IMG/VR virus record: IMGVR_UViG_3300026521_000003
Span: 62,001-126,000 of that record
Length of the DNA: 64,000 nt
Reading direction: 5' to 3' (one strand)
The position numbers and the translations under genes are program-made. The notes beneath the pieces were generated by a model. It had not been told where the DNA came from, ran no database searches, and saw only the letters and a list, made by a program, of their open reading frames with translations. This document shows positions 43,301 through 62,197 of this stretch, one piece after another (position 1 is the first letter of the stretch; each line of letters begins with the position of its first letter).

Positions 43301-46300
43301 AAAAATTGTTTTGATACCTTCACCAATTTTACTAAAATTACCAGTAAAAATTCCAGTAATAATTTGGAAAAAACCATTAATATATTTAAATATACCTTTA
43401 AAAACATCACCAACAACACTTAATAATGGTTGTATTTTATTAAAAATCCATCCAACTACTTCACCGATTTTAGAAAAGAATGCACCTAACGCATTACCTA
43501 ATTCATTAAATGTAGCAGTAATACCCATTTCATCCATCTTTTTACCTAACCATGAGAAAGCCTCTGCTACTTTATGAGCTACTACTTGTCCATCCAACAT
43601 ACCAAATGATAATGCTTCTAGTGCTCCTCCTACAGCTGATGCGGATTTTTGAGTTAAAGAAGCTCTAGCTTCTAATTTATTACCGTATTCATCTTCCCAT
43701 TGACCATTAACAAAAACTGCTTTTCCTGTTTTTGATAATGATTCAGCATATTTTTTCCCCTCTTTGGTATTTTTTGTTAATAATTTTTTTTGAGGCTCTA
43801 AATCTTTTCCAAACCATTCGGCAGCTTTACCCCAACCTTCCATTCCACCTTGGAGTGCTTTCATTGCCGCTCCAGCAAGAAAGGCAGGACCCATCATACT
43901 TTTTAAACCACCACCTAAAGTCTTCAATCCACCAGAAACAGTTTTTTTAAACCCTGTCCATTTTTTTCCTGCTTTTTGCCAAAAATTACCATCAGGTTCT
44001 AATACTGTCGCAGCATTATTTGTGTCTTTACCCTTAGCAAATGAGGTTTTAATATTTTTAAAAGTATTACCAATACTCAACCCGACATTAGAAAAAACGT
44101 CTTTTATTTTTCCAAATCCAGCTGATAACGATTCTTTAAATCCCCCAAAAATATTTGATAATCCAGAAACAGCTCCTTTTCCTGCTTTACCAATAAACCC
44201 TATTGTTTTTTTAGTAGCACTACCTATATTTGATGCTATTGTTTTTAAAGTATTAGGGAAATTCATTAAACTTTTTGTAAATTTACCTATACCTATTGCT
44301 ATACCTTTTGTGACATTCCATCCAGCAATACCTATTAAATTGGCAGTTTTCATTATACCGGATCCAAGTTTTGATATAGTATTGTCAATTAAATCAAATG
44401 CTCCAGAACTTTTTAATAGTTTTGCTAAAAATAATCCTCCCATAACCATTGATATAGTTTCAATATTTTCAGTTAAAAATGATAATGCTTTATTTAAATA
44501 AGGGAGTACGTCATTAACTAATTCCATTGTTTTATTTTGAAATGCATATAATGCTGCTGTTGCTTTTTGTTCCACTCTATCTCTAGTATTTTCAACACCC
44601 GTACTGTTAGCTTTTATCTGATTTTGTAAATAATTTGGATCTTCAATCGTTTTTTTAACATCATTATGAGTTAAAGCACTACCGTCTTTTTTTGTTAAAC
44701 CTGACATAGTTAATTTTTTACCATCTTTAGCCAATTTGATTTGTTCTTTTATTAAATCGGCATTGGAAATTTTAAAAGCATCTCTTTGATATTCTGCATA
44801 CTTTTTAGGATCATTCTTTTTTAATTCCGCAAGTTGAGATTCACTCATCTTAGAAATAAGCATCATTTGTTTTTTGGTTTCTTCTGCATTTTGATCATTT
44901 GCTATAAGTTGGTCTAACATCTTATTATAACCATCTTTATTAGTAGCACCCATTGAAACTAATAGTTTATCTAAATCAGCAGTTGATTTTTCTCCTTTTG
45001 AACGTGCTATAAATTCTTTCGTCCCCTCTTTTTGTGCAGCTATTGTTGCAGCAACACCTTGTTGGTTTATTTTGTTTGCTACTTCAGAATCTTTAGCCCA
45101 TTCTTTACTTTGTTGTAACATTTGGAATTTCGCTTTCTCACTTGCTGTTGCTGTACCATCATTAACTTTTTTAGCTAAATCAGCATACATAACTTGTTGT
45201 GCTTGAACATTAACTTGTTGCATCTGTAAAAATAATTTTTTATCTTTTTCACTTAATCCTTCAAATCCTACAAGCGATGCTTTAGCTGCTAAATCATTTG
45301 CTTCTTTTTGATTCATACCAATAGTATCTAACCCCTGTTTTAAGAAGTCAGCACCCTTTCCACCCATTTGATTCATCATATTCATATCTTTAATAGAATC
45401 AGCAATTGCTTCTGGGTCTGCAGCAATATTAGATACCTTCTCTAAAGTAGCTTTTATGTATTCTTCTGAAAAACCAGCTTGTTTCATACCAGATGCCATA
45501 CCACCCATTGTTTTTTCTATTTCTTTAGCAATATCAGCATTCATACCTTTTGTTATTAATTTTGAATTTTCATGTATAGCTTTAATTTGTTCAAGAGCGT
45601 ACTTATTACTAACACCCATTGTTTTTGCTAAAGCCGAAGTTTGAGCAGCTAAGTCATCCATCATACCTGCTGGAGATTGACCTTCTAAGACAGTTTTTAG
45701 TGAGTTAAGAGCTTCCATCTGATTTTCAGCATACTCTTTACCCATTGTACGTTCTGATAATCTTTGTTTAACTGCAACTTTTTCCATCTCTACACGATTA
45801 TTATTTAAGGAAACATTAAATGTAGTTTGTAAGCTATCAGACAAGGCTTTTAATCCAGCTGGATCTATCAATGAATTAATATGCATATTTTGGAGATCCG
45901 ATACTAGATTACCACTACTACTACCCATCTCTCTAGATATATTTAACTGGTCATGATACATACCTATAGCTTTTGTAGCCATTGCCATTGCAGCTCCTAA
46001 TGCTGCTACAGGTGCACCAACACTACTAATCATTCTTATAAAATCATTTCCAACATTTCTAACTTCACCAAATGATTTCATTCCGTCACCAACATTATCA
46101 AATGCAGATGATAAATGTCCAGCAGCATCACTTACTTTATCTAATTGATTAGAAAAGCCTTGCGCTCCTTGAGATAAAATATCAAATTTAGATTTTGATT
46201 TTTGTACCGCTTCATCTAATTTTTTTTGAGATTTTGATTCATTTTTAGTATTTTGTTTGTCTACTTTTTTTTTAGTTTTACCTTTTATTGCAGGACCCAA

Positions 46301-47032
46301 TTCATTTATAACTTTAGCGTTTTCTTCTTGTAACTTTATAACTGTCGATAATGAATCTTGAGTTGATTTTAGATTTTCTGAAGCTTCTATAATTTCAGAT
46401 TTATCGGCTCCATCAGCAACTAAACGTTCTATTAATTTAGTTTGTCGTTTAGTTTCTAATTCCAATCTATTTTGCTCAGCTATCAAATCATCACTCAAAT
46501 CATCTATACTATCTATAAATGATGTAGTGTCACCATTAAAAGTAATATTACTACCATCTACATTATAAATATTTTCAATATTTTCTTTCAAACCATCATC
46601 AATCAAACTATCAAGTGTAAATGAATTGTCCCCTAATGATATATTATTTGTAGTTTCTGTTTTTTCTTTAGGTTTACCTAAATTTGCAACATAAGAACCC
46701 AGCATTTCTTTTGCTTCATTACTATTTGAATTTTTACGTTCTTCAGCAAGCTCTTTAATAAATTCAGCAAATTTTTCATCATCTTGATCATTTGCAAAAT
46801 CATGGGTAACTGAATTTAATTCTTTTTTTAACTCATCAGCAAAATTTTCTTCAATCTGATTCAGTCTATTAATAATTTCACTTGGATTAATATCATCATT
46901 AAGAAAATCATCTCGTAAATTTATTTTTTCGCTTGACTGCCCTGATAATTTTTCAACAAGAGTATAGAGCTTCGACATTTTCTCTGATACATTTTTATAA
47001 TCAATTATTTGACTACCTTTATTAAATTCCAT
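40340..47032 (-). CDS. Tape measure protein (2230 aa)
   Basis: Long Ala/Gly/Lys-rich helical protein with periodic F/W repeats, hydrophobic stretches and two (FA)xGG...VHxxExVIP motifs typical of tape measure C-termini. Confidence 0.88.
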   Translation of the reverse strand: MEFNKGSQIIDYKNVSEKMSKLYTLVEKLSGQSSEKINLRDDFLNDDINPSEIINRLNQIEENFADELKKELNSVTHDFANDQDDEKFAEFIKELAEERKNSNSNEAKEMLGSYVANLGKPKEKTETTNNISLGDNSFTLDSLIDDGLKENIENIYNVDGSNITFNGDTTSFIDSIDDLSDDLIAEQNRLELETKRQTKLIERLVADGADKSEIIEASENLKSTQDSLSTVIKLQEENAKVINELGPAIKGKTKKKVDKQNTKNESKSQKKLDEAVQKSKSKFDILSQGAQGFSNQLDKVSDAAGHLSSAFDNVGDGMKSFGEVRNVGNDFIRMISSVGAPVAALGAAMAMATKAIGMYHDQLNISREMGSSSGNLVSDLQNMHINSLIDPAGLKALSDSLQTTFNVSLNNNRVEMEKVAVKQRLSERTMGKEYAENQMEALNSLKTVLEGQSPAGMMDDLAAQTSALAKTMGVSNKYALEQIKAIHENSKLITKGMNADIAKEIEKTMGGMASGMKQAGFSEEYIKATLEKVSNIAADPEAIADSIKDMNMMNQMGGKGADFLKQGLDTIGMNQKEANDLAAKASLVGFEGLSEKDKKLFLQMQQVNVQAQQVMYADLAKKVNDGTATASEKAKFQMLQQSKEWAKDSEVANKINQQGVAATIAAQKEGTKEFIARSKGEKSTADLDKLLVSMGATNKDGYNKMLDQLIANDQNAEETKKQMMLISKMSESQLAELKKNDPKKYAEYQRDAFKISNADLIKEQIKLAKDGKKLTMSGLTKKDGSALTHNDVKKTIEDPNYLQNQIKANSTGVENTRDRVEQKATAALYAFQNKTMELVNDVLPYLNKALSFLTENIETISMVMGGLFLAKLLKSSGAFDLIDNTISKLGSGIMKTANLIGIAGWNVTKGIAIGIGKFTKSLMNFPNTLKTIASNIGSATKKTIGFIGKAGKGAVSGLSNIFGGFKESLSAGFGKIKDVFSNVGLSIGNTFKNIKTSFAKGKDTNNAATVLEPDGNFWQKAGKKWTGFKKTVSGGLKTLGGGLKSMMGPAFLAGAAMKALQGGMEGWGKAAEWFGKDLEPQKKLLTKNTKEGKKYAESLSKTGKAVFVNGQWEDEYGNKLEARASLTQKSASAVGGALEALSFGMLDGQVVAHKVAEAFSWLGKKMDEMGITATFNELGNALGAFFSKIGEVVGWIFNKIQPLLSVVGDVFKGIFKYINGFFQIITGIFTGNFSKIGEGIKTIFDGFLDIITIPLKAVLGMVDSIFGTDMLGTFRNSFTAIKNIFGTFYELITAPFKSIMSFFKGEISFDTMVKDIFTNVKNAIIGALNGIVDLVRKPFDWVFGLVDDYFGTKFTAVFNSFIDAIKGYFNNIVNAVSGILGGFIDIVKAPFLAISAWISGDLSFIDAVKQIFDGVKNGVISLFNGFTDLVTAPFKFIIDYVDGIFGTDIKATFQGIVDGVKNIFSGFIDLVTAPFKAVVAYFTDPDMSLLDMFKNMFNGIVDAGKKIFSGLYDVVTKPISDAINWLLGMIPGMGPDSEEEKSSADLEKKGYWVDDYGYNTLNTTKVQEGLNSGEIGLKELKAMRSESGLEGKYEDELDRLIKALENGADAKTIKVEAKAKGGYTGDAANKALTQLIDPTGSAEPNGIAGVHGPGEFVIPANTVESFYKLLDFSTSNNKKTTKKESKKTETNVFSKITESIKGFISTPVDSVKGAVSNAYDKIIPNKSSETSNKLTEIKERNNQKEIISKQKQIADEQVKKTTKEGIDDKQANAMVNSLDDVKNILKDKLGVLATGLGATATSFFGGQVDIGKSVVDGITNIFTGKSTITEALTNIGGTASQSLQNLAQNVTSLLPTSVQNIVQNVGSSIKEVGTSLNTNIAGVLNGDTSIGEALTNVTSSLTNVLPNTLTNALGGITSSLSSAGDLVSTNIAGVLNGDTSIGEALTNVTSSLTSNLSNTFTSFTVEGGPLDSVMDAFDGDGSITETFNSITGSMGEGLTDALGSFDFGGIMDGLSGALGGLLGGGESGGGLLGGISSAANSLFGGESGGIGGAVSSVASSVGDFFGFAEGGKTPSTPDPVLETLTGMKGAAGIVHTNEKVIPESLVSIFDQLVMNSSSSETSKPTSGIISGTGTSGISTSPKLNNVSTQNYNSSSSSTTINNENAETTTLVNVEKLLEQMLQVQNQQLGHLNNTSKEFTKQNKIAQKSYKRDVDSSDNIRQRDISKAQYR
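41173..41402. repeat. 77-bp identical direct repeat pair in the tape measure gene (41173-41249 and 41326-41402)
   Basis: Both encode NIAGVLNGDTSIGEALTNVTSSLT; offset 153 bp, in frame. Confidence 0.92.
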
Positions 47033-49509: not shown

Positions 49510-50292
49510 ATGAGTGCGATTAATCCACTATTGCAAAGTCAAGAACCAACGTATTATGATACGGAATTACCATCACATGGTATCCCATATGAAAATATCG
49601 ATAATATTTTTGAACCAGGAACTATCCATGATGGTATTGTTCAAGTTAGACCATTAACTACCAAAGACGAACTTATTTGGACGGATCAAAAATTAGTTGA
49701 GGATTTAAAAGCCCCAATAATTATTTTAAAGAATACAGTTTTGGGTTTAAAGAATCCAGAGTTATTAATTCGAGCTGATGTTGAAGCATTATTACTCCAA
49801 GCAAGAGTTTTAACATATGGTAAAATGACAAAAGTTAGTTGGACCTGTTCAGAGTGTTCAAATACTAATGAAATTACGGTAGACTATACAAAATTACCTA
49901 TTAAAAAATTAAATTCGTTCGATGAGCTTATGTTAAAATTTAAAAATTATGAAATATTTATGATTCCTATTATATTTAAAGAAGCAGTTGAAATACAAAA
50001 AGTTAATGATAATGATATTTCCGAGCAATTAGATAAAATCGTTAGTTGTATTCAACGAGTAAATGTGATCGATCAATCAGGTGAAAAACAAACCGTTCAA
50101 GATAAACAATTTATAGCTCAATGGGTAGAACAAGTTAATCCTAAAGATTTTAAATTTATTATAGACCATTTTACTGAAGTTAATAAAATTGGTACTGTAT
50201 TAGATTTAGATGTTAAATGTGCACATTGTGCATATAAAGAGAAAACTGATGTAGTGGTGGATATAACCAATTTTTTCTCCGAAGAGGATTGA
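49510..50292 (+). CDS. Baseplate hub assembly / tail assembly chaperone, gp26-like
   Basis: YDTELPSHG, VRPLTTKDE, D.EALLLQARVLTYG, and two CxxC pairs (CSEC, CAHC). Confidence 0.8.
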   Translation: MSAINPLLQSQEPTYYDTELPSHGIPYENIDNIFEPGTIHDGIVQVRPLTTKDELIWTDQKLVEDLKAPIIILKNTVLGLKNPELLIRADVEALLLQARVLTYGKMTKVSWTCSECSNTNEITVDYTKLPIKKLNSFDELMLKFKNYEIFMIPIIFKEAVEIQKVNDNDISEQLDKIVSCIQRVNVIDQSGEKQTVQDKQFIAQWVEQVNPKDFKFIIDHFTEVNKIGTVLDLDVKCAHCAYKEKTDVVVDITNFFSEED

Positions 50293-50549: not shown

Positions 50550-53117
50550 TTAGCTAACTGATATAGGAATTATTAGGTGTTCCATATAAGGACTTGGTTT
50601 AATTGCAACTAAAGCATTAAGTTTAGATTGTGCTAATACAATCGGAGGATTATATTCTTCTGTTACACTTGCTTCTGCTTCTGCTAAACAACTATTAACA
50701 ACATATGTATTTAAATATGATTGGAAATCACTTTGAATTCTATCCCATAATGCAGGAATACTTAAATCAAATAAGTAATTTTTACCAGCCATTGTTAAAT
50801 CTCTTACAATTTGCTCAATCATAAGCATTGTTCCTACTTTTTGCATAGGTGATGTTTTACTATAAGTTGTTTTTTGACCCATAATATGAATACCTGTTGT
50901 TAATCCTTTAGTTATCGGATTTATACCCATTCCATAAAGTCTATCTCTCATTACTTGTGATAATTTAATATCTTTAGAAACAGCTACAGCATCATAGATA
51001 ACACCTCTTACTGTTCCTGCAGGGGCATCACAAATTTTACCATTTTTCTGCGTTAATGCCATTGATTGTAATGCAGAACCACTTGGTGGTACAGCTACAA
51101 CTTTTTTAGTCATAGTATCTAATTTCATAACCCATGGGTAATAAATAGACTCAAATTTAGAATTGTGATTACCACTAGTTCTCCAATTAATAACTGCTTG
51201 TGCTGTTAAATTTGGAGTATCAATAATACAATGAAAATCTCTTCTATTTTCAGCTAATGAAACCATTTCACCACTAACAGCACCATATTGTGAAAAATAA
51301 GGACATGCTAATGCTTTATAAGCAAATTCTTCAAAGTTTTGAACAGCCCATACCCCTGTTTGATGTGCAACAGATCCAGCAATATATGGTATCAATTTTT
51401 CATCATTTTTATAATCATCTTCTGTAAACATATCAGCTCCACCCATAAGTGGCATAGGAAGTTCAGCTCCAGTATCAGGATCAATATCATTAACTGGGTA
51501 TGTTAAGCTATTTGTTGGATCAACTGGAGTAGCAATACTAATAAGTACATTTTTAAATGTTAGTTGATCAGCTTTATATGATGCTGAAACACCATTTTCA
51601 ATTTCAACTATATCTGAACCACGCTCTTCATAGATATGAATATTAACTTCATCAATAGAAACATCATAATCAACAGAAACTTGATAATTATTACCCCATT
51701 CACCTGGTGAAATAGCATCAACTCTAAATGCTTGGTTAGCTGGATCTTTCTTAATATTATTCATTTTTTCAATAATTTCAGCAAGTTTTTCAGCTGCATT
51801 AGCAAATTGTACAGTAACATTATAATTTCTACCAGTACCTTCTATTGCAGGTAATGTAGCAGGACCATCGGAAACTCGTGGACAATCTTTCTTAAATAAT
51901 TCACCTAATAAGAAAACATCTTCATCTGAATTTAAGAAATAATTGTGTGTTTCAACATCTCCACCTAAAGGCATAACATAATTTCTAATTTCACCAGCTG
52001 TAAAATCTCTTTCTACACCATCAACATCTCTTAATGTGATGATTGTTGAATCACCAAGCGCCATATTGATTATTACAGGATATGCTGTTGCGTATGCTAC
52101 AGATCCATTAGAACAATCTACATTATTATAAGTACCCCAATCTATTAATTTATCTGAATATACTACTTGCTTCATAGTATCTAATGTTAATCCTGAAAGT
52201 ACCAAAATACCATTATCACGCACATATTTTTGTATATTTAGTGGTAATTGAACATATTCATTTTTTGCCATTGTATAGTTATCTGATTCTTCTCTAAATT
52301 CTGCTCTAGCTGCATCATATTTTTTGAAACCAGCTAAATTAAATATTGGAGCCCAAGCTGATTCTATAGCATTTGATCCACCAGCAAAATTTACTGTAGC
52401 TTTTAATTTTTCAATTAAAATAGTTGATGTAAATGGTTCTCTCTCAAATATAAACATAAAGTCTTCAGTTTCATTTCCATTTACTAGTTCATTAAATTGT
52501 TTAACACATTCATCAGATACTGGATCATATAAATATTCACCAAAATGATTAACTTGGTCTGCATCATCAATAGCAGTATATACTCTTTGTGTTGCAAAAT
52601 CTACATTAAATCTATTTTTTCCTGGAACAGGAATAAATTCTGGGTATGGACTTGTTTCAGTTTCAGCCCATTCTTCAGGAGTTAATGGATTCTTCATTTC
52701 TATAAGAACCTGCATTGTAACTACACCATCAAAATTTATAGGATTTATATCTTGAAAAACAGCTCTTAATGAATTCCCAAACTCACCACTTGTTTTATAT
52801 CTAATTGTTAATAATGGCTTAGCATCTCTAGCCTTAATTGTTGTTTCAGCAAAACCTGGAGTATCAGCTCCTGCTCTAATTATCCATGCACTAGAACCTT
52901 GTTTAAAAAATTCATAAGCTGCAAACATTCCATATTGTTTTTTTGAAAGATCTGCTTCTCCAAAAATTTGTAAAGCCTCTTGAGCTGAACCACATAGATA
53001 CGGTTGATTAACCGGACCTTTACTTGCAAATGTTACGATTGTTGGAATAAATGATGAATCTCCACCAGGATATGATGGGGAATTATCAATTAATTTTGTT
53101 TCTACACCTACTAACAT
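50550..53117 (-). CDS. gp18: Tail sheath protein, gp18-like (855 aa)
   Basis: KGPVNQPYL, AISPGEWGN, ENRRDFHCIIDTP, YYPWVMKLD, VAVPPSG, APAGTVRG, LY..GINPI, GQKT and IKPSPYMEHLII. Confidence 0.95.
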   Translation of the reverse strand: MLVGVETKLIDNSPSYPGGDSSFIPTIVTFASKGPVNQPYLCGSAQEALQIFGEADLSKKQYGMFAAYEFFKQGSSAWIIRAGADTPGFAETTIKARDAKPLLTIRYKTSGEFGNSLRAVFQDINPINFDGVVTMQVLIEMKNPLTPEEWAETETSPYPEFIPVPGKNRFNVDFATQRVYTAIDDADQVNHFGEYLYDPVSDECVKQFNELVNGNETEDFMFIFEREPFTSTILIEKLKATVNFAGGSNAIESAWAPIFNLAGFKKYDAARAEFREESDNYTMAKNEYVQLPLNIQKYVRDNGILVLSGLTLDTMKQVVYSDKLIDWGTYNNVDCSNGSVAYATAYPVIINMALGDSTIITLRDVDGVERDFTAGEIRNYVMPLGGDVETHNYFLNSDEDVFLLGELFKKDCPRVSDGPATLPAIEGTGRNYNVTVQFANAAEKLAEIIEKMNNIKKDPANQAFRVDAISPGEWGNNYQVSVDYDVSIDEVNIHIYEERGSDIVEIENGVSASYKADQLTFKNVLISIATPVDPTNSLTYPVNDIDPDTGAELPMPLMGGADMFTEDDYKNDEKLIPYIAGSVAHQTGVWAVQNFEEFAYKALACPYFSQYGAVSGEMVSLAENRRDFHCIIDTPNLTAQAVINWRTSGNHNSKFESIYYPWVMKLDTMTKKVVAVPPSGSALQSMALTQKNGKICDAPAGTVRGVIYDAVAVSKDIKLSQVMRDRLYGMGINPITKGLTTGIHIMGQKTTYSKTSPMQKVGTMLMIEQIVRDLTMAGKNYLFDLSIPALWDRIQSDFQSYLNTYVVNSCLAEAEASVTEEYNPPIVLAQSKLNALVAIKPSPYMEHLIIPISVS

Positions 53118-56052: not shown

Positions 56053-57360
56053 TTACAAATATGAATATTCAATCTCAGAAATTATTTCATTTGTTTCAAT
56101 AATTTTGAACTGTCCACCCATATCTTTAAATTTATTTATCTTATTTATAGTTGATTCAATTGTTTCACTAATATTAGATTTATTAATAGGTGAATATAAT
56201 AAATATTGATTCGAGATAGAAACAATAGGCTGACCTTCAAAATTTTCCATAACTAAGACTTTATGTTTATTTGATTTTGGAATATCCAATGTCGATATAA
56301 TTTCTTTAAATAGATTATCAACAACAATCATATTCTCAATTTCTAAATTTTCAGATTTAAGATTACGTATAATTGTTTCTAAATATTTTTCTTCATTCTT
56401 AATTTCAGTTCCAAAAATTTTTGCTTGTTCTAATCTCTTTTTTGCTAAAGAGCGATATTTCATTTCAATAGGGGATAATTCAATTGCAGGTAGTTCTTCA
56501 TTAGAAATAATTTTTGTATCTAAATCATACGGTATATTATCGGTATAATCAACAAGTATTGATTTTTGTGATTCAAGTTTAAATTTAACAGCAACAACTT
56601 CAAGTTTTTTATCTATTCGTTCTTTAATAACCTCATAAGTTACTTTAATATCCGATTTATCATTAACTTCTTGTACGGCTTTTTTCAATATATCTCTGTT
56701 AAAATTAGCCCATTTTTGTAAAGATGGTTTATTAACAATATCAACATTTAAAATAGCTTTTAATATATTTATCTCTATACGTTTTTCATAAGACCCAACA
56801 TAATCTTTTAAAAGTTCATATAATAGTTTTGAATATTTCGATTTTAATCCCACTTGAATCTGTAATGAAAATTTAGTATAATAATTTTTTATATTTAAAA
56901 ACATTATTAATAATTCTGGTTCTATCCAGACTTTAACTCTTTTACTTGTAGTTTGTTTATCCTTTGACCAAGCTATTTTTCTTAGAAAATGAAATAATAT
57001 CGATTCTTGAGTTTTATTTTTATGTAATACATTTGTTAAAACTTGTATTTTGGATATTTCATGTAAATTTTTTATTATTTCATTATAATACCCATTTTTA
57101 TATTTACCCAGTACATCCGAAATCGACTGCAAATTAATTTCAAAATGATTTAGTGACGCCCATTCATAAATCTCTTCTTCTGTTAATTCTTGCTGCAACA
57201 TAATATCAGAAATAAAGAAAAACATAGTCCCAATTAAATCAACTTGAATTGGTGTTAAAACAGCAAATTCTTCTTTTATAAAATCTTTGTAATATAAAAC
57301 TTGACATAATTCTGATGGTTTTCTTAATTCTAAATTTTTTGTTACTTCTTTTTTACTCAT
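56053..57360 (-). CDS. repB: Plasmid-type replication initiator protein (Rep_3 / RepB family, tandem winged helix)
   Basis: LKSKYSKLLYELLKDY...I.INILKAILN...WANFNRDILKKAVQEVNDKSDIKVTYE is the Rep_3 WH2 signature. Start moved to ATG 57360, 8 nt behind AAGG. Confidence 0.85.
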   Translation of the reverse strand: MSKKEVTKNLELRKPSELCQVLYYKDFIKEEFAVLTPIQVDLIGTMFFFISDIMLQQELTEEEIYEWASLNHFEINLQSISDVLGKYKNGYYNEIIKNLHEISKIQVLTNVLHKNKTQESILFHFLRKIAWSKDKQTTSKRVKVWIEPELLIMFLNIKNYYTKFSLQIQVGLKSKYSKLLYELLKDYVGSYEKRIEINILKAILNVDIVNKPSLQKWANFNRDILKKAVQEVNDKSDIKVTYEVIKERIDKKLEVVAVKFKLESQKSILVDYTDNIPYDLDTKIISNEELPAIELSPIEMKYRSLAKKRLEQAKIFGTEIKNEEKYLETIIRNLKSENLEIENMIVVDNLFKEIISTLDIPKSNKHKVLVMENFEGQPIVSISNQYLLYSPINKSNISETIESTINKINKFKDMGGQFKIIETNEIISEIEYSYL

Positions 57361-57410
57361 ATGTTCAACCTTATTTTTTTTGTATTTATTAGATTTTACA
57401 ATCACAATTA

Positions 57411-57939
57411 AAATTACACAATCTAATCACAGTTTTTTATAGTTTATTTAATATTTTTAAATTTTATACCTATATTTATATGACATTTTATTTTAATTTT
57501 AAATTACACAATCTAATCACAGTTTTTTCTTTTTGGTTCTTAATATATTAAATTATATCAAAAATAACTCAAAAAATAATTCTTAGTTAAATTTAATGTA
57601 GTTTATAGCTATTTTTCAGAAGAAAAAAACTTAAAAAAAAAATCTTAGTTATGGCATTTTTTATTTTATTTATATTTTTATATAATTTATTCTTATATAT
57701 TGAACTCATTAATAGTCAATAAAATATATAATAAACTATATTTTAACTAAAAAATATTTTTTGAGTTATCTAAAAAACTAAAAATAAATACGTAAGTTAA
57801 AATTTAAAAATTTAACTAAGAATTATTTTTTGAGTTAAAAAATGGGTTTTTTGCCGCATTTTAAGACTATAAAAATAAGGTGTTTTTTTTGGTTCACAAT
57901 CTAATCACGAAAACTACACAATCTAATCACAGTTTTTTT
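57411..57939. repeat. Iteron-like family A: CACAATCTAATCAC core x4 (57417, 57507, 57895, 57917)
   Basis: Three copies extend to about 28 bp (AAA(T/C)TACACAATCTAATCACAGTTTTTT). The last pair has a 22-bp period. All are in the same orientation, upstream of rep. Confidence 0.88.
57565..57837. repeat. Family B: 25-bp TAACT-N15-AGTTA sites x5, including a perfect 30-bp inverted repeat (57565-57594 / 57808-57837)
   Basis: Copies start at 57565, 57627 (21/25 identity), 57744 (23/25, inverted), 57775 (arms only) and 57813 (perfect, inverted). Confidence 0.85.
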
Positions 57940-58157
57940 CAAGGGTCACTGGGTAACACTATATTTTCTCGTGCAAAACTAGGACTGTACAAAATACAAA
58001 TAGAATAAAGGATAGATAAATAGCCTTCGGCATGAAATAGATTGGTTGATCTAAATCATCTTTATTTAATCTGATTCATCTTTACACACTACCTATTAAA
58101 ATTCCTATTAAAATTAATTGTATAATTAAAACAAAATTATTAAATTAAAGGTAATTT

Positions 58158-59213
58158 ATGTCAAAGAAAATCACAATGAGTACAGATTGGCATTTTGGTA
58201 AATCAAATGGAAGGTTTGACAATATTATTTTAAATGGTATTATTGAACAATGTAATTATGCAAAAGATAATAATATCAAAGTTATGATTAATCTTGGTGA
58301 TACATTAGATGTAAAGCAATCAATTACTACTAGTACTATGAATTATTTAGCTAAAGCATTCCAGTTAATAAATGAAACATTCGATAAAGTTTATGTATTG
58401 GTTGGTAATCATGATATGTCCAAAAAAACTTATAATAATGATGGACATAATTTACATATCTTTTCTGGTTATAGTAATATTGAGGTTATTGACACTCCAA
58501 AAATAATTTCAATATTCGATTCAGATTTTTATTTTATGCCTTATTTCCCAAATGATTATCTCAAAAATCATACTTTTGAAAAAGCTAGATATTTGTGTGC
58601 TCATATTGAAGTACAAGGATTTATGTTAAATCAATTTGTTAAAGCTGAAGATGGTTTGAATATGCAGGCTATAACAAATATATATGACAATGTTTTTTTA
58701 GGTCATTTTCATAAGCGACAATCTAGAGGGAATGTATCATATATTGGTAATATGTGTAGATTTTTTTATGGTGAAAATGATGAAGAGCGTGGTTGGACTA
58801 TCTTAGATGTTGAAAATAATGATTATGAATTTGTTGAATACCAACACCCTAAAATGTATAAATTTAAATTATCAACATTAATGAATTTAGATGAAGATTT
58901 AAATGATATATTTGAACCAGGTGATAATCTTAAACTGGTTATTGATAAACAATTAAAATATTCTGAATTAGAGGAGTTTAAATCAAAACTAATTTTGGAT
59001 TATAAAATTAATGATTTAGTATTAGACGACCAGTTTTATGCATTTGATATTGATGAAATAGATGATGAAGATGAAATAGATGATAATGTTACAGATTTAG
59101 ACCCTAGTTATATGGATTATCTATTAACAGAAATGGGGAAGATTATCACAGACGATAATGCCATAGAAGCATTAGAATATCTTAGAGAAAAATCTAAAGA
59201 TTATCAGGAATAA
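58158..59213 (+). CDS. gp47: Recombination endonuclease subunit, gp47/Mre11/SbcD-like
   Basis: Calcineurin-like phosphoesterase motifs DWHFG, GDTLD, GNHD, HIE and GHFH. Confidence 0.95.
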   Translation: MSKKITMSTDWHFGKSNGRFDNIILNGIIEQCNYAKDNNIKVMINLGDTLDVKQSITTSTMNYLAKAFQLINETFDKVYVLVGNHDMSKKTYNNDGHNLHIFSGYSNIEVIDTPKIISIFDSDFYFMPYFPNDYLKNHTFEKARYLCAHIEVQGFMLNQFVKAEDGLNMQAITNIYDNVFLGHFHKRQSRGNVSYIGNMCRFFYGENDEERGWTILDVENNDYEFVEYQHPKMYKFKLSTLMNLDEDLNDIFEPGDNLKLVIDKQLKYSELEEFKSKLILDYKINDLVLDDQFYAFDIDEIDDEDEIDDNVTDLDPSYMDYLLTEMGKIITDDNAIEALEYLREKSKDYQE

Positions 59214-59285
59214 AAGCCTAATAAAATATGGTTTTAAAATCCTATTAATGTAAAATATGTATAAAGATAAAAAAATGGAAGATAA

Positions 59286-61127
59286 ATGAAGATTAAATTT
59301 CGTAAAATTGAAATACAAAATTTTTATAGTTATGGTGATAAACAGGAAGTAGACTTAGATCAATTTAAAAGTACAGTTGTTTTAATAGATGGTATAGATA
59401 AAGATACAGAGGGATCAAAAATTGGTTCTGGTAAATCATCATTCCTTGCAGCAATAACATATGCATTATTTGGTGAAACCGTTTCAAATGTAAAAGCTAA
59501 TGAGATAGTAAATTATATAAAAGGTAAAAATGCATTAGTTGTTTTAATATTTGAAATGAATAATACTCTTTTTAAAATTGAAAGGGGTAGAAAACCAAAT
59601 ATATTAAATATCTATCAAGAAATTGATAGAGATGAAAATGATGATATTCAATGGGAAAATATATCAAGAGCTGATATAAAAGATAATGATAAACTTATTG
59701 TTTCATTAATAAAAATCAATTTTGAAACATTTTTACAAACATCATTATTTTCTGTAGCTTCAGAGCATAATAAACCTTTTTTAAATATGACTCCATCAAA
59801 TCAAAAAAAAGTTCTTGAAAATATTTTTAATTTTGATTTATTTAATAATATGATTAATGAGATAAAAGATGATGTTCGTGACAAACAAGTTATTAGAGCT
59901 GAATTAGAATCTTCATTAAGAGAAGTTCAAATCTCAAATGAACAAATAGAATCACAAATAGAAAGACTGAAGGAATCTTCAGATAAATTTGAAAAACGTA
60001 GAAATAAACGTATTAAAGAACTTGAAGAAAGTATAGTTTTTTATAATAATATTGATATTGAAGAAGAAAAAGATAAATTTGCATTTATAGATGAGTTAAA
60101 AGAACATAAAACTAATATTACTTCAACTATTTCGGAATTGAAAATTGAGTTAAAAGATATTCAAACTGAATTATCGAGAGTTGATAGGGAAATCGAATTG
60201 TTAGTCAATGATTATCAATCAGAAGAAGATAATAATAAGAGTTTAAGAGGTAATATTTGTCCAACTTGTCATCAAGATTGGGAAGATCCAGATGCAATAA
60301 TAGCAAGTGATAATAAATTAAAAAAAATAGGTTCTGAAATAATTTCTTTTGAGAAAAGCTTAAATGAATTTGAGGTAGTTGAACAAAAAATTCTAAAAAA
60401 GATTAAAGATAAAAAAAGTATTTTGTTTGAAATTAAAGAAGCTATAGATGAAGTAGAAACACAAATTGATAAAAAAGAATTGGATAATATTGATATTATA
60501 TTATCTAATATTAAGAAAGAACTAAAAAATGAAATAAATCAAGAAAACCATTATCTTATGGAAATAGAAGCAAATAAATCACTACTTCGAGAAATAGATA
60601 CGGAAACATTAGACAAAGTTGATAGTTGGATTCAAAATATTAAAGCATTTATTAAATTATCTGAGGATCCTAAGACAAGAGGGAAATTTTTAAGAAAATT
60701 TATAAAACAATCTAATGAAATTTTACGAGGGTTTAAAAAATTAATACCGGATTATAATATTCATATTCAATTCAATCCTGACTTTACCATTAGAGTTATG
60801 AAGTTAGGTAAAGAAGTTAATCCTGCATCTTTATCAAATGGTGAAAAGAGGATTGGAAATATAATGATAATGATGGCATTAATGAAAGTATTTAAACTTA
60901 AAAATAACGTTGAATTTAATGCTATTTTTATGGATGAAGTACTTGATAGTGGTATTAATGGTGCCTTATTAGAAAGTGTTTACACTTTTATAAAAAATGT
61001 AGCAAAAGAAGAACAAATGAGAGTTTATTTAATTTCACATAGAGAGGAAATTAAAGAAAAAGTTAAAGAAGTTATAATGGTTACAAAATCAAGAGGCATA
61101 TCAACTATTGAAATAAATCCTATGTGA
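59286..61127 (+). CDS. gp46: Recombination ATPase subunit, gp46/Rad50/SbcC-like
   Basis: Walker A GSGKSS, coiled coil with CPTC zinc hook, signature LSNGEKR, Walker B IFMDE and ISH. Confidence 0.96.
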   Translation: MKIKFRKIEIQNFYSYGDKQEVDLDQFKSTVVLIDGIDKDTEGSKIGSGKSSFLAAITYALFGETVSNVKANEIVNYIKGKNALVVLIFEMNNTLFKIERGRKPNILNIYQEIDRDENDDIQWENISRADIKDNDKLIVSLIKINFETFLQTSLFSVASEHNKPFLNMTPSNQKKVLENIFNFDLFNNMINEIKDDVRDKQVIRAELESSLREVQISNEQIESQIERLKESSDKFEKRRNKRIKELEESIVFYNNIDIEEEKDKFAFIDELKEHKTNITSTISELKIELKDIQTELSRVDREIELLVNDYQSEEDNNKSLRGNICPTCHQDWEDPDAIIASDNKLKKIGSEIISFEKSLNEFEVVEQKILKKIKDKKSILFEIKEAIDEVETQIDKKELDNIDIILSNIKKELKNEINQENHYLMEIEANKSLLREIDTETLDKVDSWIQNIKAFIKLSEDPKTRGKFLRKFIKQSNEILRGFKKLIPDYNIHIQFNPDFTIRVMKLGKEVNPASLSNGEKRIGNIMIMMALMKVFKLKNNVEFNAIFMDEVLDSGINGALLESVYTFIKNVAKEEQMRVYLISHREEIKEKVKEVIMVTKSRGISTIEINPM

Positions 61128-61160: not shown

Positions 61161-61811
61161 ATGAAATTTTCAGATCTAGATTTAGATATACCTTCTAAAT
61201 TGTCAAATGATATTAGGTATAAATTTATAAGAGCATCGGTTAAAAATAATGGGAATTATCAACCTCATCCAGCAGGTATATATCTATATAAGAATATTCC
61301 TCAATTTAATAAAATTGCTGTAAATGATTATAAATTTATGGAAGATAATAATTATCAAAAAATTGATATTTTGAATAATACATTTTTAGATAATATTACA
61401 AATGATGAAATGGACAAATTTATAGATTTAATTGAAATGGAAGAAATTGATTGGAAAAAGCTTTATACATATGATGAACCTTATCAACTTAGTAAATATC
61501 CATCAATATTAAAAGAATTTCAAGTTTCATCAGTATTTGATATTGCAATGGTTTTATCTATAATAAGACCTGGATCAATTAAAAAATATGATGCTTTAAA
61601 AAAAGCTATGAAAACAAAAAAAAAGATTAGTAAAGATATAAAGTATTATGATATTTTAAAAGACACGTATGGAGTTCCAATTTTTAATGAACAATATAAA
61701 GAGATAGGTATTGATGATGGTGTGTATAGATATAAAAAACCACACGCTATCGGTTATGCCTATGTATTGTTGATTGATTTTTTAAAAAAAAGTCATAAAA
61801 TTAAGGAATAA
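61161..61811 (+). CDS. dnaE: Minimal DNA polymerase III alpha (DnaE) catalytic-core protein (216 aa)
   Basis: SDLDLD, HPAGI, KIDILN, YQL, IIRPG, LKDTYGV..FNEQ and YKKPHAIGYA occur in DnaE order. Confidence 0.78.
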   Translation: MKFSDLDLDIPSKLSNDIRYKFIRASVKNNGNYQPHPAGIYLYKNIPQFNKIAVNDYKFMEDNNYQKIDILNNTFLDNITNDEMDKFIDLIEMEEIDWKKLYTYDEPYQLSKYPSILKEFQVSSVFDIAMVLSIIRPGSIKKYDALKKAMKTKKKISKDIKYYDILKDTYGVPIFNEQYKEIGIDDGVYRYKKPHAIGYAYVLLIDFLKKSHKIKE

Positions 61812-61912: not shown

Positions 61913-62197
61913 ATGACAAAAGCAGATATGGTAGTTCAACTACAAGAAATTATTGGTGAAGAAAAAGTTTCAAAAGCAGAATGTGAAAGAATCTGGAATG
62001 GTTTAATCGAAATTATTGCAGAAGAGGTAAAAGATGGTGGTGAAGTAAAATTTGGTTCACTATTTAAAGTTTATAAAAAACATAAAAATGCTAGAAAAGT
62101 AAGAAATCCGAGAACTGGCGAAACTTTCATGAAAGAAGCTAGAGATGAACTAGGATGTAAAGTTATGAGAGAAGGTAAATACCTTATTCAAGACTAG
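61913..62197 (+). CDS. hup: HU/IHF-family DNA-binding protein
   Basis: MTKADMV, EVKFGSLFKV and ARKVRNPRTGE arm motif. Confidence 0.92.
   Translation: MTKADMVVQLQEIIGEEKVSKAECERIWNGLIEIIAEEVKDGGEVKFGSLFKVYKKHKNARKVRNPRTGETFMKEARDELGCKVMREGKYLIQD

What the first reader, a model, noticed from the sequence alone, without database searches (positions are those of the whole stretch)
57411..57939. Near-symmetric A-A-B-B-[AT core]-B'-B'-B'-A-A origin layout with a second binding-site family
Seen: besides the iterons there is a separate 25-bp family with palindromic arms (TAACT-N15-AGTTA). Two copies face one way (57565, 57627) and two the other (57744, 57813). A fifth copy (57775) keeps only the arms. 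The outer pair forms a perfect 30-bp inverted repeat around an A/T core. Inferred: a second dimeric protein binds these sites (partition/centromere factor, Rep dimer operator or host factor), or they extrude a cruciform that helps unwinding. Two interleaved repeat families point to a regulated origin.
Basis: partly seen in the sequence, partly recalled or inferred. Interest (0 to 1): 0.7.

Follow-up and report, generated by a model that had tools for sequence, protein, structure and literature searches.

The report
Second binding-site family in phage origin
The replication origin of an uncultivated deep-sea-vent giant phage carries, besides the usual initiator repeats, a real and evolutionarily conserved second set of 23-bp two-fold-symmetric protein-binding boxes around its easily melted centre, but which protein binds them is not settled.

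Summary
Between a Rep3-family initiator gene (56053-57360, minus strand) and an sbcD-sbcC operon lie four direct iterons and five copies of a second box. Both families occur nowhere else in the 290-kb phage genome.

The boxes are not a chance product of AT-rich DNA. Nine Rep lineages (50-64% identical) keep the same layout, with near-identical spacings. The box is always a 23-bp frame: half-site nnnTCAA, a 9-bp A/T spacer, then TTGAnnn. The outer half-site bases change together within each genome (AACT, CCCT, CCAT, ACCG).

Hybrid boxes with non-complementary arms, and near-zero hairpin energies in the window, argue against a cruciform. The genome has no ParA or ParB, which argues against a centromere. 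The origin has no DnaA box and no canonical IHF consensus.

The box geometry equals the F-plasmid RepE dimer operator. Rep plus origin form a self-contained cassette that is absent at this site in a relative. Boxes occur only with Reps that carry a clade-specific C-terminal domain of unknown fold. My best guess (about 0.4) is that Rep itself binds them, as a dimer or through that domain. However, the half-sites do not track the iterons. A phage-encoded HU/IHF-like protein or another factor remains possible. This is a new variant of a known kind.

The parts
56053..57360 (-). rep: Rep3-family initiator, 435 aa. The ATG is at 57360; the ORF lister's GTG at 57405 is upstream of it. The protein has WH1+WH2 (about residues 20-266) plus a clade-specific C-terminal domain (about 298-435).
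   Evidence: Pfam Rep3_N and Rep3_C match. The AlphaFold model matches RepE, Pi and RctB. The C-terminal domain modelled alone has pLDDT 88.8 and no fold match. It is the only Rep3 gene in the genome.
57393..57407 (-). Likely rep promoter: a -10 hexamer TAAAAT (57393-57398) directly preceded by a partial iteron half TTGTGATTG (57399-57407). The RBS AAGG is at 57369-57372.
   Evidence: All relatives have TATAAT at the homologous place, just after the last iteron and flanked by inverted iteron halves. This is inferred from sequence only.
57416..57432 (+). Iteron A1 (exact 17-mer).
   Evidence: The 28-bp interval around it (57411-57438) is 96% identical to L004 (27 of 28), while the neighbouring spacer is 63%.
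57506..57522 (+). Iteron A2 (exact), 90 bp from A1.
57565..57589 (+). B box B1, half-sites AACTCAA / AACTAAG.
57627..57651 (+). B box B2, half-sites AACTTAA / AACTAAG.
   Evidence: It is 100% conserved in L004.
57652..57743 (.). A/T core, the probable DNA unwinding element. The least stable 40-mer of the whole intergenic region lies at about 57662-57701 (97% A+T).
   Evidence: Nearest-neighbour stability profile. The sequence is only 68% conserved against L004, so composition is kept rather than sequence.
57744..57768 (-). B box B3.
57775..57799 (-). B box B4, degenerate (AACTTAC / AACTAAA).
   Evidence: Its position 38 bp from B5 matches the 38/39-bp spacing in all relatives. It is 100% conserved in L004.
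57813..57837 (-). B box B5, identical to B1 over 30 bp.
   Evidence: It lies 72 bp from the iteron pair, as in six other lineages.
57863..57881 (+). Third conserved motif (..TATAAAAATAAGGT..), probably promoter-associated.
   Evidence: Copies lie after the iteron pair and between the last two iterons in relatives. One also lies next to TATAAT in the origin-less relative L150.
57894..57932 (+). Iteron pair A3 (3 mismatches) and A4 (exact), 22 bp apart.
   Evidence: The 22-bp pair is present in eight of the nine lineages mapped; in L133 the scan matched only one copy.
57939..58045 (.). Conserved, G+C-richer block of unknown role, 94% identical to L004. It contains a short hairpin GCC-TTC-GGC at 58023-58031.
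   Evidence: There is no Rfam match.
58118..58126 (+). Likely promoter of the sbcD operon (TTGTATAAT).
   Evidence: This is the same motif as at the rep promoters of relatives. It is an inference.
58158..61127 (+). sbcD-like (58158-59213) and sbcC-like (59286-61127) nuclease genes, divergent from rep.
61913..62197 (+). HU/IHF-family DNA-bending protein, 94 aa. It is a candidate accessory factor for the origin.
   Evidence: Pfam Bac_DNA_binding E = 8e-16. The best NCBIfam model is IHF-alpha, far below its cut-off. The protein is 85-100% conserved in relatives.

Best explanation
The stretch is the origin of a self-contained rep-ori cassette, made of the Rep3 initiator gene plus about 0.8 kb of sites, in an uncultivated jumbo myovirus from hydrothermal-vent metagenomes.

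Rep monomers bind the four direct iterons. Each iteron has two GTG subsites 11 bp apart. The iterons sit as two outer pairs.

The B boxes are a second, separately maintained class of 23-bp dyad-symmetric protein-binding sites. Each has a half-site nnnTCAA, a 9-bp A/T spacer, and TTGAnnn. They form two inner clusters that bracket the A/T-rich unwinding core.

I think the most likely binder is the cassette's own initiator. It would act either as a RepE-like dimer, with its two WH2 domains on the inverted half-sites, or through its clade-specific C-terminal domain. Box occupancy would bend and organise the DNA around the core and tune initiation. In most relatives it would also block the rep leader.

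Shown: the sites, their conservation, their geometry and their restriction to the origin. Inferred: the identity of the binder and the effect on initiation.
For: 1. The sites are real and under selection. They are unique in the 290-kb genome. Against the close relative L004, boxes are 84-100% conserved and spacers 63-78%.
2. Nine lineages share one layout: iteron pair (22 bp apart), 72 bp, B, 38/39 bp, B, core, B, 35/36 or 60-62 bp, B, iteron, 90-102 bp, iteron.
3. Across 100 half-sites, position 4 is T in 93%, position 6 is A in 100%, and the centre is 95% A/T. The outer bases change in concert within each genome.
4. The geometry equals the verified F repE operator, GTGACAA-N9-TTGTCAC: a 7-9-7 frame with CAA/TTG inner triplets and an A-rich spacer. 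The best structural match of the Rep model is the RepE dimer-operator complex 2z9o.
5. Cassette argument. In relative L150 the orthologues of the 320-aa gene (51% identical) and sbcD (61% identical) are adjacent, separated by 195 bp. There is no rep and there are no boxes. Rep is therefore the only protein that travels with the boxes.
6. Boxes occur in 9 of 9 lineages of the 420-450-aa Rep clade. They occur in 0 of 5 lineages of the 385-398-aa clade, which has tandem iterons only. The C-terminal-domain profile finds none of the short Reps.
7. Seven of the nine mapped lineages carry one box in the rep leader, downstream of the TATAAT. That is a place for feedback control.
8. Rep diverges at a rate comparable to the half-sites (50-64% identity), whereas the HU-like protein is 85-95% identical.
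Against: - B half-sites are not an iteron half, as they are in F, and they do not co-vary with the iteron subsites. Mean matches were 1.98 of 6 within lineages and 1.93 across lineages, and 34% of permutations did as well.
- Two positions always differ between the two site classes. The base before CAA is A in iterons and T in boxes. Position 2 is T in iterons and A or C in boxes.
- A classical iteron-derived inverted repeat already flanks the rep -10 in several relatives and partly in the window. A Rep-dimer operator of the usual kind therefore exists separately.
- Hybrid boxes with two different half-sites in a fixed polarity (L126, L133, L137) fit a homodimer poorly.
- The C-terminal domain has no recognisable DNA-binding fold.
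- The Rep-clade correlation is a single evolutionary event.
- The one attempt to model Rep with box DNA was not folded by the tool.
Confidence: 0.4

Rival explanations
1. The boxes are bound by the phage-encoded HU/IHF-family homodimer (61913-62197), or by a host nucleoid protein. This protein bends the DNA on both sides of the A/T core and helps Rep open it, as IHF or HU do at pSC101, R6K and RK2.
For: - An HU/IHF-family gene lies 4 kb away in the operon that starts at the origin. It is syntenic in every relative examined.
- A homodimer fits a dyad site with an A/T-rich centre.
- The half-site core TCAA recalls the IHF core WATCAA.
- Identity between boxes extends to 30-35 bp, which is an IHF-like footprint.
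- Iteron origins generally need Rep plus a nucleoid protein to open (PMC5043065).
- Arm-tip substitutions accompany changes of half-site type: R67K in both lineages with CATCAA half-sites, and N59G, M73T and R77K in the CCCT lineage.
Against: - The protein is 85-95% identical across lineages, and its arms are nearly invariant, while the outer half-site bases differ completely.
- It is a core gene, present in L150 where the cassette is missing at this site.
- The origin has no match to WATCAANNNNTTR.
- The orientation and distance of TCAA from the dyad differ from IHF sites.
- HU/IHF proteins read the minor groove and are rarely this sequence-specific (established knowledge).
Confidence: 0.15
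2. The boxes are bound by another dimeric factor, phage or host, that has not been identified. One example would be a regulator of the two divergent promoters (rep and the sbcD operon), with only an indirect effect on replication.
For: - The half-sites evolve independently of the iterons.
- Hybrid boxes suggest a binder with its own evolving or relaxed specificity.
- The boxes lie between two divergent promoters, and one lies in the rep leader of most relatives.
Against: - No boxes occur anywhere else in the 290-kb genome or in the 21 kb held for two relatives. The factor would therefore have no autoregulatory site at its own gene.
- No other gene travels with the cassette.
- No conserved small ORF lies in the intergenic region.
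- The neighbouring small proteins give no DNA-binding signal.
Confidence: 0.25
3. The boxes act as DNA structure. Hairpins or cruciforms extrude and help unwinding or priming, or the boxes act as RNA hairpins or terminators that insulate the origin.
For: In some relatives the boxes are strong palindromes followed by T runs. Examples are L128 at -11.2 kcal/mol and L140 at -10.0 kcal/mol, with z-scores of -4.3 and -6.3.
Against: - In the window the five boxes fold at 0 to -4.1 kcal/mol. Three are no better than shuffles.
- Hybrid boxes pair at only 4-5 of 8 arm positions, and G-T pairs do not rescue them.
- The 30-bp outer repeat has a 213-nt spacer and is not conserved in L004.
- No terminator-like sites were found.
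- What is conserved is the half-site consensus and the 23-bp frame, not the pairing.
Confidence: 0.05
4. The boxes are a partition centromere for a plasmid-like prophage state.
For: Arrays of short palindromes near a plasmid-type rep gene resemble some centromeres.
Against: - The genome, estimated 87% complete, has no ParB_N or ParA (AAA_31) match.
- The boxes interleave with the iterons at fixed distances and bracket the A/T core.
Confidence: 0.03

Closest known systems
F plasmid ori2/oriS with RepE (Rep3 family; also pSC101, R6K gamma, pPS10)
   Same: Both have a WH1-WH2 initiator next to directly repeated iterons and an A/T-rich region. Both have an inverted repeat bound by the dimeric initiator. 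The verified F operator, GTGACAA-N9-TTGTCAC, has the same 7-9-7 frame, the same CAA/TTG inner triplets and an A-rich spacer like the B box.
   Different: - F has one operator, at the promoter, built from the iteron's own half-site. Here there are 5-7 boxes inside the origin, and their half-sites differ systematically from the iterons.
- The iterons here are split into two outer pairs instead of one tandem array.
- There are no DnaA boxes.
- Rep here carries an extra C-terminal domain of about 140 aa.
Vibrio cholerae chromosome 2 origin: RctB with 12-mers and 39-mers
   Same: An initiator with a RepE-like WH core plus extra domains recognises two unrelated site classes, one promoting and one restraining initiation (PMC5395669). 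RctB domains 2-3 are among the structural matches of the Rep model.
   Different: - The 39-mers bind monomers and number two or three. Here the sites are dyad-symmetric 23-mers in two clusters.
- The C-terminal domain here shows no similarity to any solved structure.
- No methylation sites are involved.
- Binding of Rep to the boxes has not been shown.
Bacteriophage lambda origin (O protein, O-some)
   Same: Both have several imperfect palindromes with an internal A tract, bound by dimers and lying next to an A/T-rich region that melts (PMC7466680, PMC5043065). The arm ATCCCTCAA of relative L128 equals the lambda arm.
   Different: - The lambda arms are 5 bp apart in a 19-bp site. Here TCCCTC and GAGGGA are 13 bp apart.
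- The genome has no Phage_rep_O protein.
- The origin does not lie inside the initiator gene.
- A separate iteron family exists here.
IHF/HU sites of iteron origins (pSC101, R6K, RK2)
   Same: In both, a DNA-bending site lies between the initiator sites and the unwinding element. An HU/IHF-family gene is encoded nearby.
   Different: There is no IHF consensus. The sites are symmetric, multiple and lineage-specific in sequence.

Membership tests
Rep3 iteron-type theta origin | An adjacent initiator with Rep3_N (WH1) and Rep3_C (WH2) domains. | tested here: met
   Pfam E-values 1.7e-10 and 4.8e-9. The fold matches RepE and Pi at E about 1e-6.
Rep3 iteron-type theta origin | Three or more directly repeated sites of 17-22 bp next to rep. 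| tested here: met
   There are four copies, all direct, unique in the genome, and conserved in position in relatives.
Rep3 iteron-type theta origin | An A/T-rich unwinding element beside the initiator sites. | tested here: met
   The least stable 40-mer of the intergenic region lies at 57662-57701. This is a test of composition only; melting was not tested.
Rep3 iteron-type theta origin | DnaA boxes, present in many but not all members. | tested here: not met
   No TTATCCACA with up to 1 mismatch lies in 57364-58157.
Rep3 iteron-type theta origin | The stretch supports autonomous replication that depends on Rep. | not testable with these tools
   Only indirect support: the genome-wide cumulative GC-skew minimum lies at this locus, but this is confounded by gene orientation.
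Rep3 dimer operator (RepE type) | Two inverted half-sites about 16 bp centre to centre, with a 9-bp spacer. | tested here: met
   49 of the 50 boxes used from nine lineages are 23-bp 7-9-7 frames. The scan accepted 21-27 bp and found one further box, in L137, of 24 bp. The F operator has the same frame.
Rep3 dimer operator (RepE type) | The half-site is identical to the part of the iteron read by WH2. | tested here: not met
   There is no lineage-specific match, with 34% of permutations doing as well. Two positions differ consistently.
Rep3 dimer operator (RepE type) | The site overlaps the rep promoter. | tested here: not met
   The window has no box near the promoter. In seven relatives one box lies in the leader, downstream of the -10.
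Lambda-type origin | An initiator of the Phage_rep_O family. | tested here: not met
   No match in the genome.
IHF binding site | A match to WATCAANNNNTTR with a flanking A tract. | tested here: not met
   None of the 20 matches in the window lies in the origin.
Partition centromere | Cognate ParA and ParB-type genes. | tested here: not met
   No ParB_N or AAA_31 match. The genome is 87% complete.
RctB-like dual-site initiator | A WH1-WH2 core plus an extra C-terminal domain. | tested here: met
   The models show this architecture. RctB is among the fold matches of the core.
RctB-like dual-site initiator | The extra domain binds the second site class. | not testable with these tools
   The complex prediction was not folded. 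The only evidence is co-occurrence of the domain and the boxes.

The most novel reading that the evidence does not exclude
The phage Rep has independently become a dual-specificity initiator like RctB. In this reading its clade-specific C-terminal domain, of a fold not seen in PDB or AlphaFold DB clusters, is a new sequence-specific DNA-binding module. It reads the B boxes and so gives the cassette a built-in second control circuit. The hybrid boxes would record the stepwise co-evolution of this domain and its sites.
Probability: 0.2. Interest if true: 0.7.

Novelty: new variant of a known kind. Interest (0 to 1): 0.5.

Why it matters
Iteron origins are a textbook system, yet how initiator binding is turned into strand opening and copy control is still open.

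This origin has two co-existing site classes at near-invariant spacings across at least nine natural variants. The half-sites have visibly re-specified (AACT, CCCT, CCAT, ACCG), and intermediate hybrid boxes survive. Together these form a ready-made natural mutagenesis series for asking what each site class does and who reads it.

The finding also documents a mobile rep-ori cassette in giant phages from hydrothermal vents. No cultured relative of this group carries the initiator. If Rep reads both classes, it would be a second, independent case of the RctB solution. If the phage HU-like protein does, it would be a rare sequence-specific member of that family.

Tried and rejected
- Complex prediction of two Rep chains with box DNA: the job was accepted but not folded, so it gives no evidence.
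- Covariation of box half-sites with iteron subsites: none. The striking 10-of-12 matches in the window and in L128 are not general.
- HU-like protein as the specificity determinant: too conserved, and present without the cassette.
- Lambda O-like initiator, a second Rep3 gene, and ParA/ParB: all absent.
- DnaA boxes and the IHF consensus: absent from the origin.
- Hairpin, cruciform or terminator reading: rejected for the window.
- Fold of the Rep C-terminal domain: no significant match in PDB or AlphaFold DB clusters. The Atlas gave only weak leads to C-terminal domains of Firmicute Rep proteins.
- A small ORF across iterons A3-A4 (39 aa): conserved only in the closest relative.
- Rfam search of the intergenic region: nothing found.
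- Sigma-70 promoter scan: not enriched.
- Neighbouring small proteins of 113 and 115 aa: no informative family.
- Population variation from public runs: the same sequence in four runs, so no extra footprint information.
- GenBank phages: no DNA or protein match to Rep.
- A strict whole-genome pattern search in relatives' records was too narrow to be informative.

Full report
**What is there.** The window is bases 62001-126000 of a 289,880-bp IMG/VR virus record. The phage is an A/T-rich (about 27% G+C) myovirus-like jumbo phage, with a tail sheath gene at 50550-53117 and a baseplate hub gene at 49510-50292. Public runs that hold the sequence are hydrothermal-vent and epibiont metagenomes. Four runs from three studies assemble the stretch identically or with at most three differing letters and one single-base insertion, so it is not an assembly artefact. 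The finding lies in the 797-bp divergent intergenic region between two genes. One is a Rep3-family initiator gene at 56053-57360 on the minus strand, with Pfam Rep3_N and Rep3_C matches. The other is an sbcD-like gene at 58158 on the plus strand, followed by an sbcC-like gene, a Pol III alpha finger fragment and an HU/IHF-family gene.

Three exact and one imperfect copy of ACACAATCTAATCACAG lie at 57416, 57506, 57894 and 57916, all on the + strand. Five copies of a second box lie at 57565, 57627 (+ sense) and 57744, 57775, 57813 (- sense). The outer pair forms a perfect 30-bp inverted repeat. TAACT-N15-AGTTA occurs three times in the window against 0.22 expected, and nowhere else in the genome. 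With up to 5 mismatches to the 25-mer consensus, only the four good copies are found in 290 kb, where random genomes give 0.43. The iterons are equally unique. The A/T core between B2 and B3 holds the least stable 40-mer of the intergenic region. The cumulative GC skew of the whole genome has its minimum in the 5-kb bin that contains the locus, although gene orientation switches there too.

**Relatives.** A phage with a 96%-identical Rep (L004) gives a clean footprint. Iterons are 96-100% identical and boxes 84-100%, against 63-78% for spacers and 68% for the core. The four changes in B1 turn it into a copy of B2. Rep homologues of 50-64% identity sit in the same synteny in many metagenomic contigs. 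Their intergenic regions of 0.9-1.1 kb all contain both families. A map of eleven loci (nine distinct lineages) shows one architecture:
- an iteron pair 22 bp apart, matched in eight of the nine lineages (only one copy in L133);
- 72 bp to the first box (72 or 73 bp in seven of the nine lineages);
- 38/39 bp to the next box, and in some lineages 52 bp to a third;
- a central gap of 117-148 bp, with an extra iteron in three lineages;
- two or three boxes 35/36 or 60-62 bp apart;
- an iteron, then 90-102 bp to the last iteron;
- in seven lineages, a further box 78-89 bp on, before rep.

The window, L004 and L127 lack that last box.

**Anatomy of the box.** In 49 of the 50 boxes used it is a 23-bp frame; the scan accepted 21-27 bp, and one further box in L137 is 24 bp. 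Over 100 half-sites, position 4 is T in 93%, position 5 is C in 80%, position 6 is A in 100% and position 7 is A in 87%. The central seven bases are 95% A/T. The outer four bases are uniform within a genome and differ between genomes:
- AACT in the window, L124, L125 and L127;
- CCCT in L128 and L138;
- CCAT or CAAT in L140;
- mixed boxes with two half-site types in a fixed polarity in L126 (AACTCAA with CCATCAA), L133 (AACTCAA with TCATCAA) and L137 (ACCGCAA with CACTCAA).

In these hybrids only 4-5 of 8 arm positions are complementary. As single strands, the window's boxes fold at 0 to -4.1 kcal/mol. Three are no better than shuffles. The L126 hybrid folds at -0.1, while the L128 and L140 boxes reach -10 to -11 kcal/mol. 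What is conserved is therefore a half-site consensus at a fixed distance, not base pairing. This is the signature of a two-fold-symmetric protein site, not of a cruciform. The 30-bp perfect repeat of the window is one of several lineage-specific identities between boxes. L125 has a 34-bp one between two other boxes. These reflect homogenisation of boxes plus a few flanking bases.

**Who binds: tests that failed or excluded candidates.**
- The genome has no lambda-O-like protein, no second Rep3, no ParA and no ParB.
- The origin has no DnaA box and no IHF consensus.
- Nothing else in the genome, or in the 21 kb held around two relatives' origins, carries a box. The binder therefore has no other target, not even at a distant gene of its own.
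- No conserved small ORF and no Rfam family lie in the region.

**The HU/IHF-like protein.** This 94-aa protein (61913-62197; Pfam E = 8e-16; its best NCBIfam model is IHF-alpha, far below the cut-off) is syntenic in every relative examined. It is an obvious candidate, because iteron origins usually open with Rep plus HU or IHF (PMC5043065). However, it is 85-95% identical across lineages with unrelated outer half-site bases. It is also present in relative L150, where the orthologues of the 320-aa gene and sbcD are adjacent, 195 bp apart, with no rep, no iterons and no boxes. It may well bend this origin, but it is unlikely to be what reads the lineage-specific bases.

**Who binds: the case for Rep.** The L150 comparison shows that rep plus its sites form a cassette of about 2.1 kb. 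The 306-kb genome to which L150's type belongs carries two other Rep3 genes elsewhere. Rep is the only protein that moves with the boxes, and it diverges at a rate comparable to them.

The Rep model has a RepE-like WH1-WH2 core. Its best fold match is the RepE dimer on its operator, 2z9o, and RctB domains 2-3 also match. I checked the F operator in the F plasmid record. Immediately upstream of repE it reads GTGTGACAA, then nine bases (TCTAAAAAC), then TTGTCACAC. This is the same 7-9-7 frame as the B box, with CAA and TTG as inner triplets and an A-rich spacer.

Rep also carries a C-terminal domain of about 140 aa. It is confidently modelled (pLDDT 88.8) and has no significant match in PDB or AlphaFold DB clusters. 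A profile of this domain finds it in all long Reps and in none of the 385-398-aa Reps of the sister clade. The origins of that sister clade, in five lineages, have only 3-4 tandem iterons plus an inverted iteron copy at the promoter, and no second family. An initiator that reads two site classes has a precedent in RctB of Vibrio chromosome 2 (PMC5395669).

**The case against Rep.** In F the operator arms are the iteron's own WH2 half. Here they are not. At a fixed register, box half-sites match the cognate iteron subsite no better than those of other lineages (1.98 against 1.93 of 6 positions, with 34% of permutations doing as well). Two positions differ in every lineage: the base before CAA is A in iterons and T in boxes, and position 2 is T in iterons and A or C in boxes. 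The two classes are therefore kept distinct.

Moreover, the rep promoter has its own classical arrangement. In all lineages a TATAAT (TAAAAT in the window, 57393-57398) follows the last iteron and is preceded by an iteron half-copy; in several relatives an inverted iteron half follows it as well. The leader box of most relatives lies downstream of that promoter.

The hybrid boxes also fit a simple homodimer poorly. The attempt to model two Rep chains on a box was not folded by the tool and counts for nothing.

**Verdict.** I am about 85% confident that the boxes are a genuine, selected, origin-specific class of dyad-symmetric protein sites that bracket the unwinding core. The binder is unresolved. 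I put about 0.4 on Rep (as a dimer or through the C-terminal domain), 0.15 on the HU/IHF-like protein or a host nucleoid protein, 0.25 on another factor, 0.05 on DNA or RNA structure and 0.03 on a centromere.

Mechanistically, the most economical picture is a nucleoprotein complex. Rep monomers occupy the two outer iteron pairs. Dimers occupy the inner boxes, whose A-tract centres favour bending. Together they fold the DNA around the A/T core and set the threshold for opening. In most relatives an extra box in the rep leader provides feedback.

No GenBank phage has this Rep. The closest described systems are F and pSC101-type Rep3 origins, the RctB two-site origin and the lambda O-some. The feature meets the defining tests of an iteron origin. 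It fails one defining test of a Rep-dimer operator and the defining tests of the lambda, IHF-site and centromere families. I rate it a new variant of a known kind.

Noticed in passing
window 57939-58045 (hairpin 58023-58031): A G+C-richer block is 94% identical to L004. It contains a short hairpin, GCC-TTC-GGC. In relatives the stem changes in a compensatory way: GGAC..GTCC in L124 and L125, and GACC..GGTC in L128. It has no Rfam match. It could be part of the sbcD leader, a small RNA or a priming signal.
   Followed up: partly
window 57863-57881; L125:2327-2349 and 2772-2794; L150:4095-4125: A third conserved motif (CACCTTATT... / ...AATAAGGTG, often palindromic) lies after the iteron pair and between the last two iterons. 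It also lies next to TATAAT in the relative that lacks the cassette. It is probably a phage promoter-associated element.
   Followed up: partly
window 58046-58115: Two short direct-repeat pairs lie just upstream of the sbcD promoter: a 19-nt pair at 58046 and 58066, and the 12-nt CCTATTAAAATT twice at 58092. Relatives carry a different tandem array there (..GATGGAAATCA.., L124:1954-2114).
   Followed up: no
L150:3954-4147; L155 and L159: The rep-ori cassette is missing at this position in a relative. That relative's type of genome (306 kb) has two other Rep3 genes at different places. The cassette therefore looks mobile within this phage group.
   Followed up: partly
L126, L133, L137 (boxes listed): Hybrid boxes have two different half-sites in a constant polarity. 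They look like intermediates in a change of binding specificity.
   Followed up: partly
window 61161-61811: A free-standing 216-aa ORF matches only the finger domain of DNA polymerase III alpha. It is conserved in all relatives. It may be a split or fragmentary polymerase gene.
   Followed up: no
window 61913-62197: A phage-encoded HU/IHF-family protein is 85-100% conserved across the group. phmmer finds no solved structure at E 0.001 or below.
   Followed up: partly
window 22486-30996 and 40340-47032: Two giant ORFs of 2836 and 2230 aa lie on the minus strand in the structural region. They were not examined.
   Followed up: no
window 57358-57405: The mechanical ORF starts at a GTG at 57405. 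The likely start is the ATG at 57360, which has an AAGG ribosome-binding site at 57369-57372. My early protein queries carried one extra N-terminal residue.
   Followed up: yes
window 57552-57560 (-): An extended -10-like TGATATAAT lies between B1 and iteron A2 and reads towards rep. In L004 the homologous spot has ATGTATAAT on the other strand. This may be a source of transcription into the origin.
   Followed up: no
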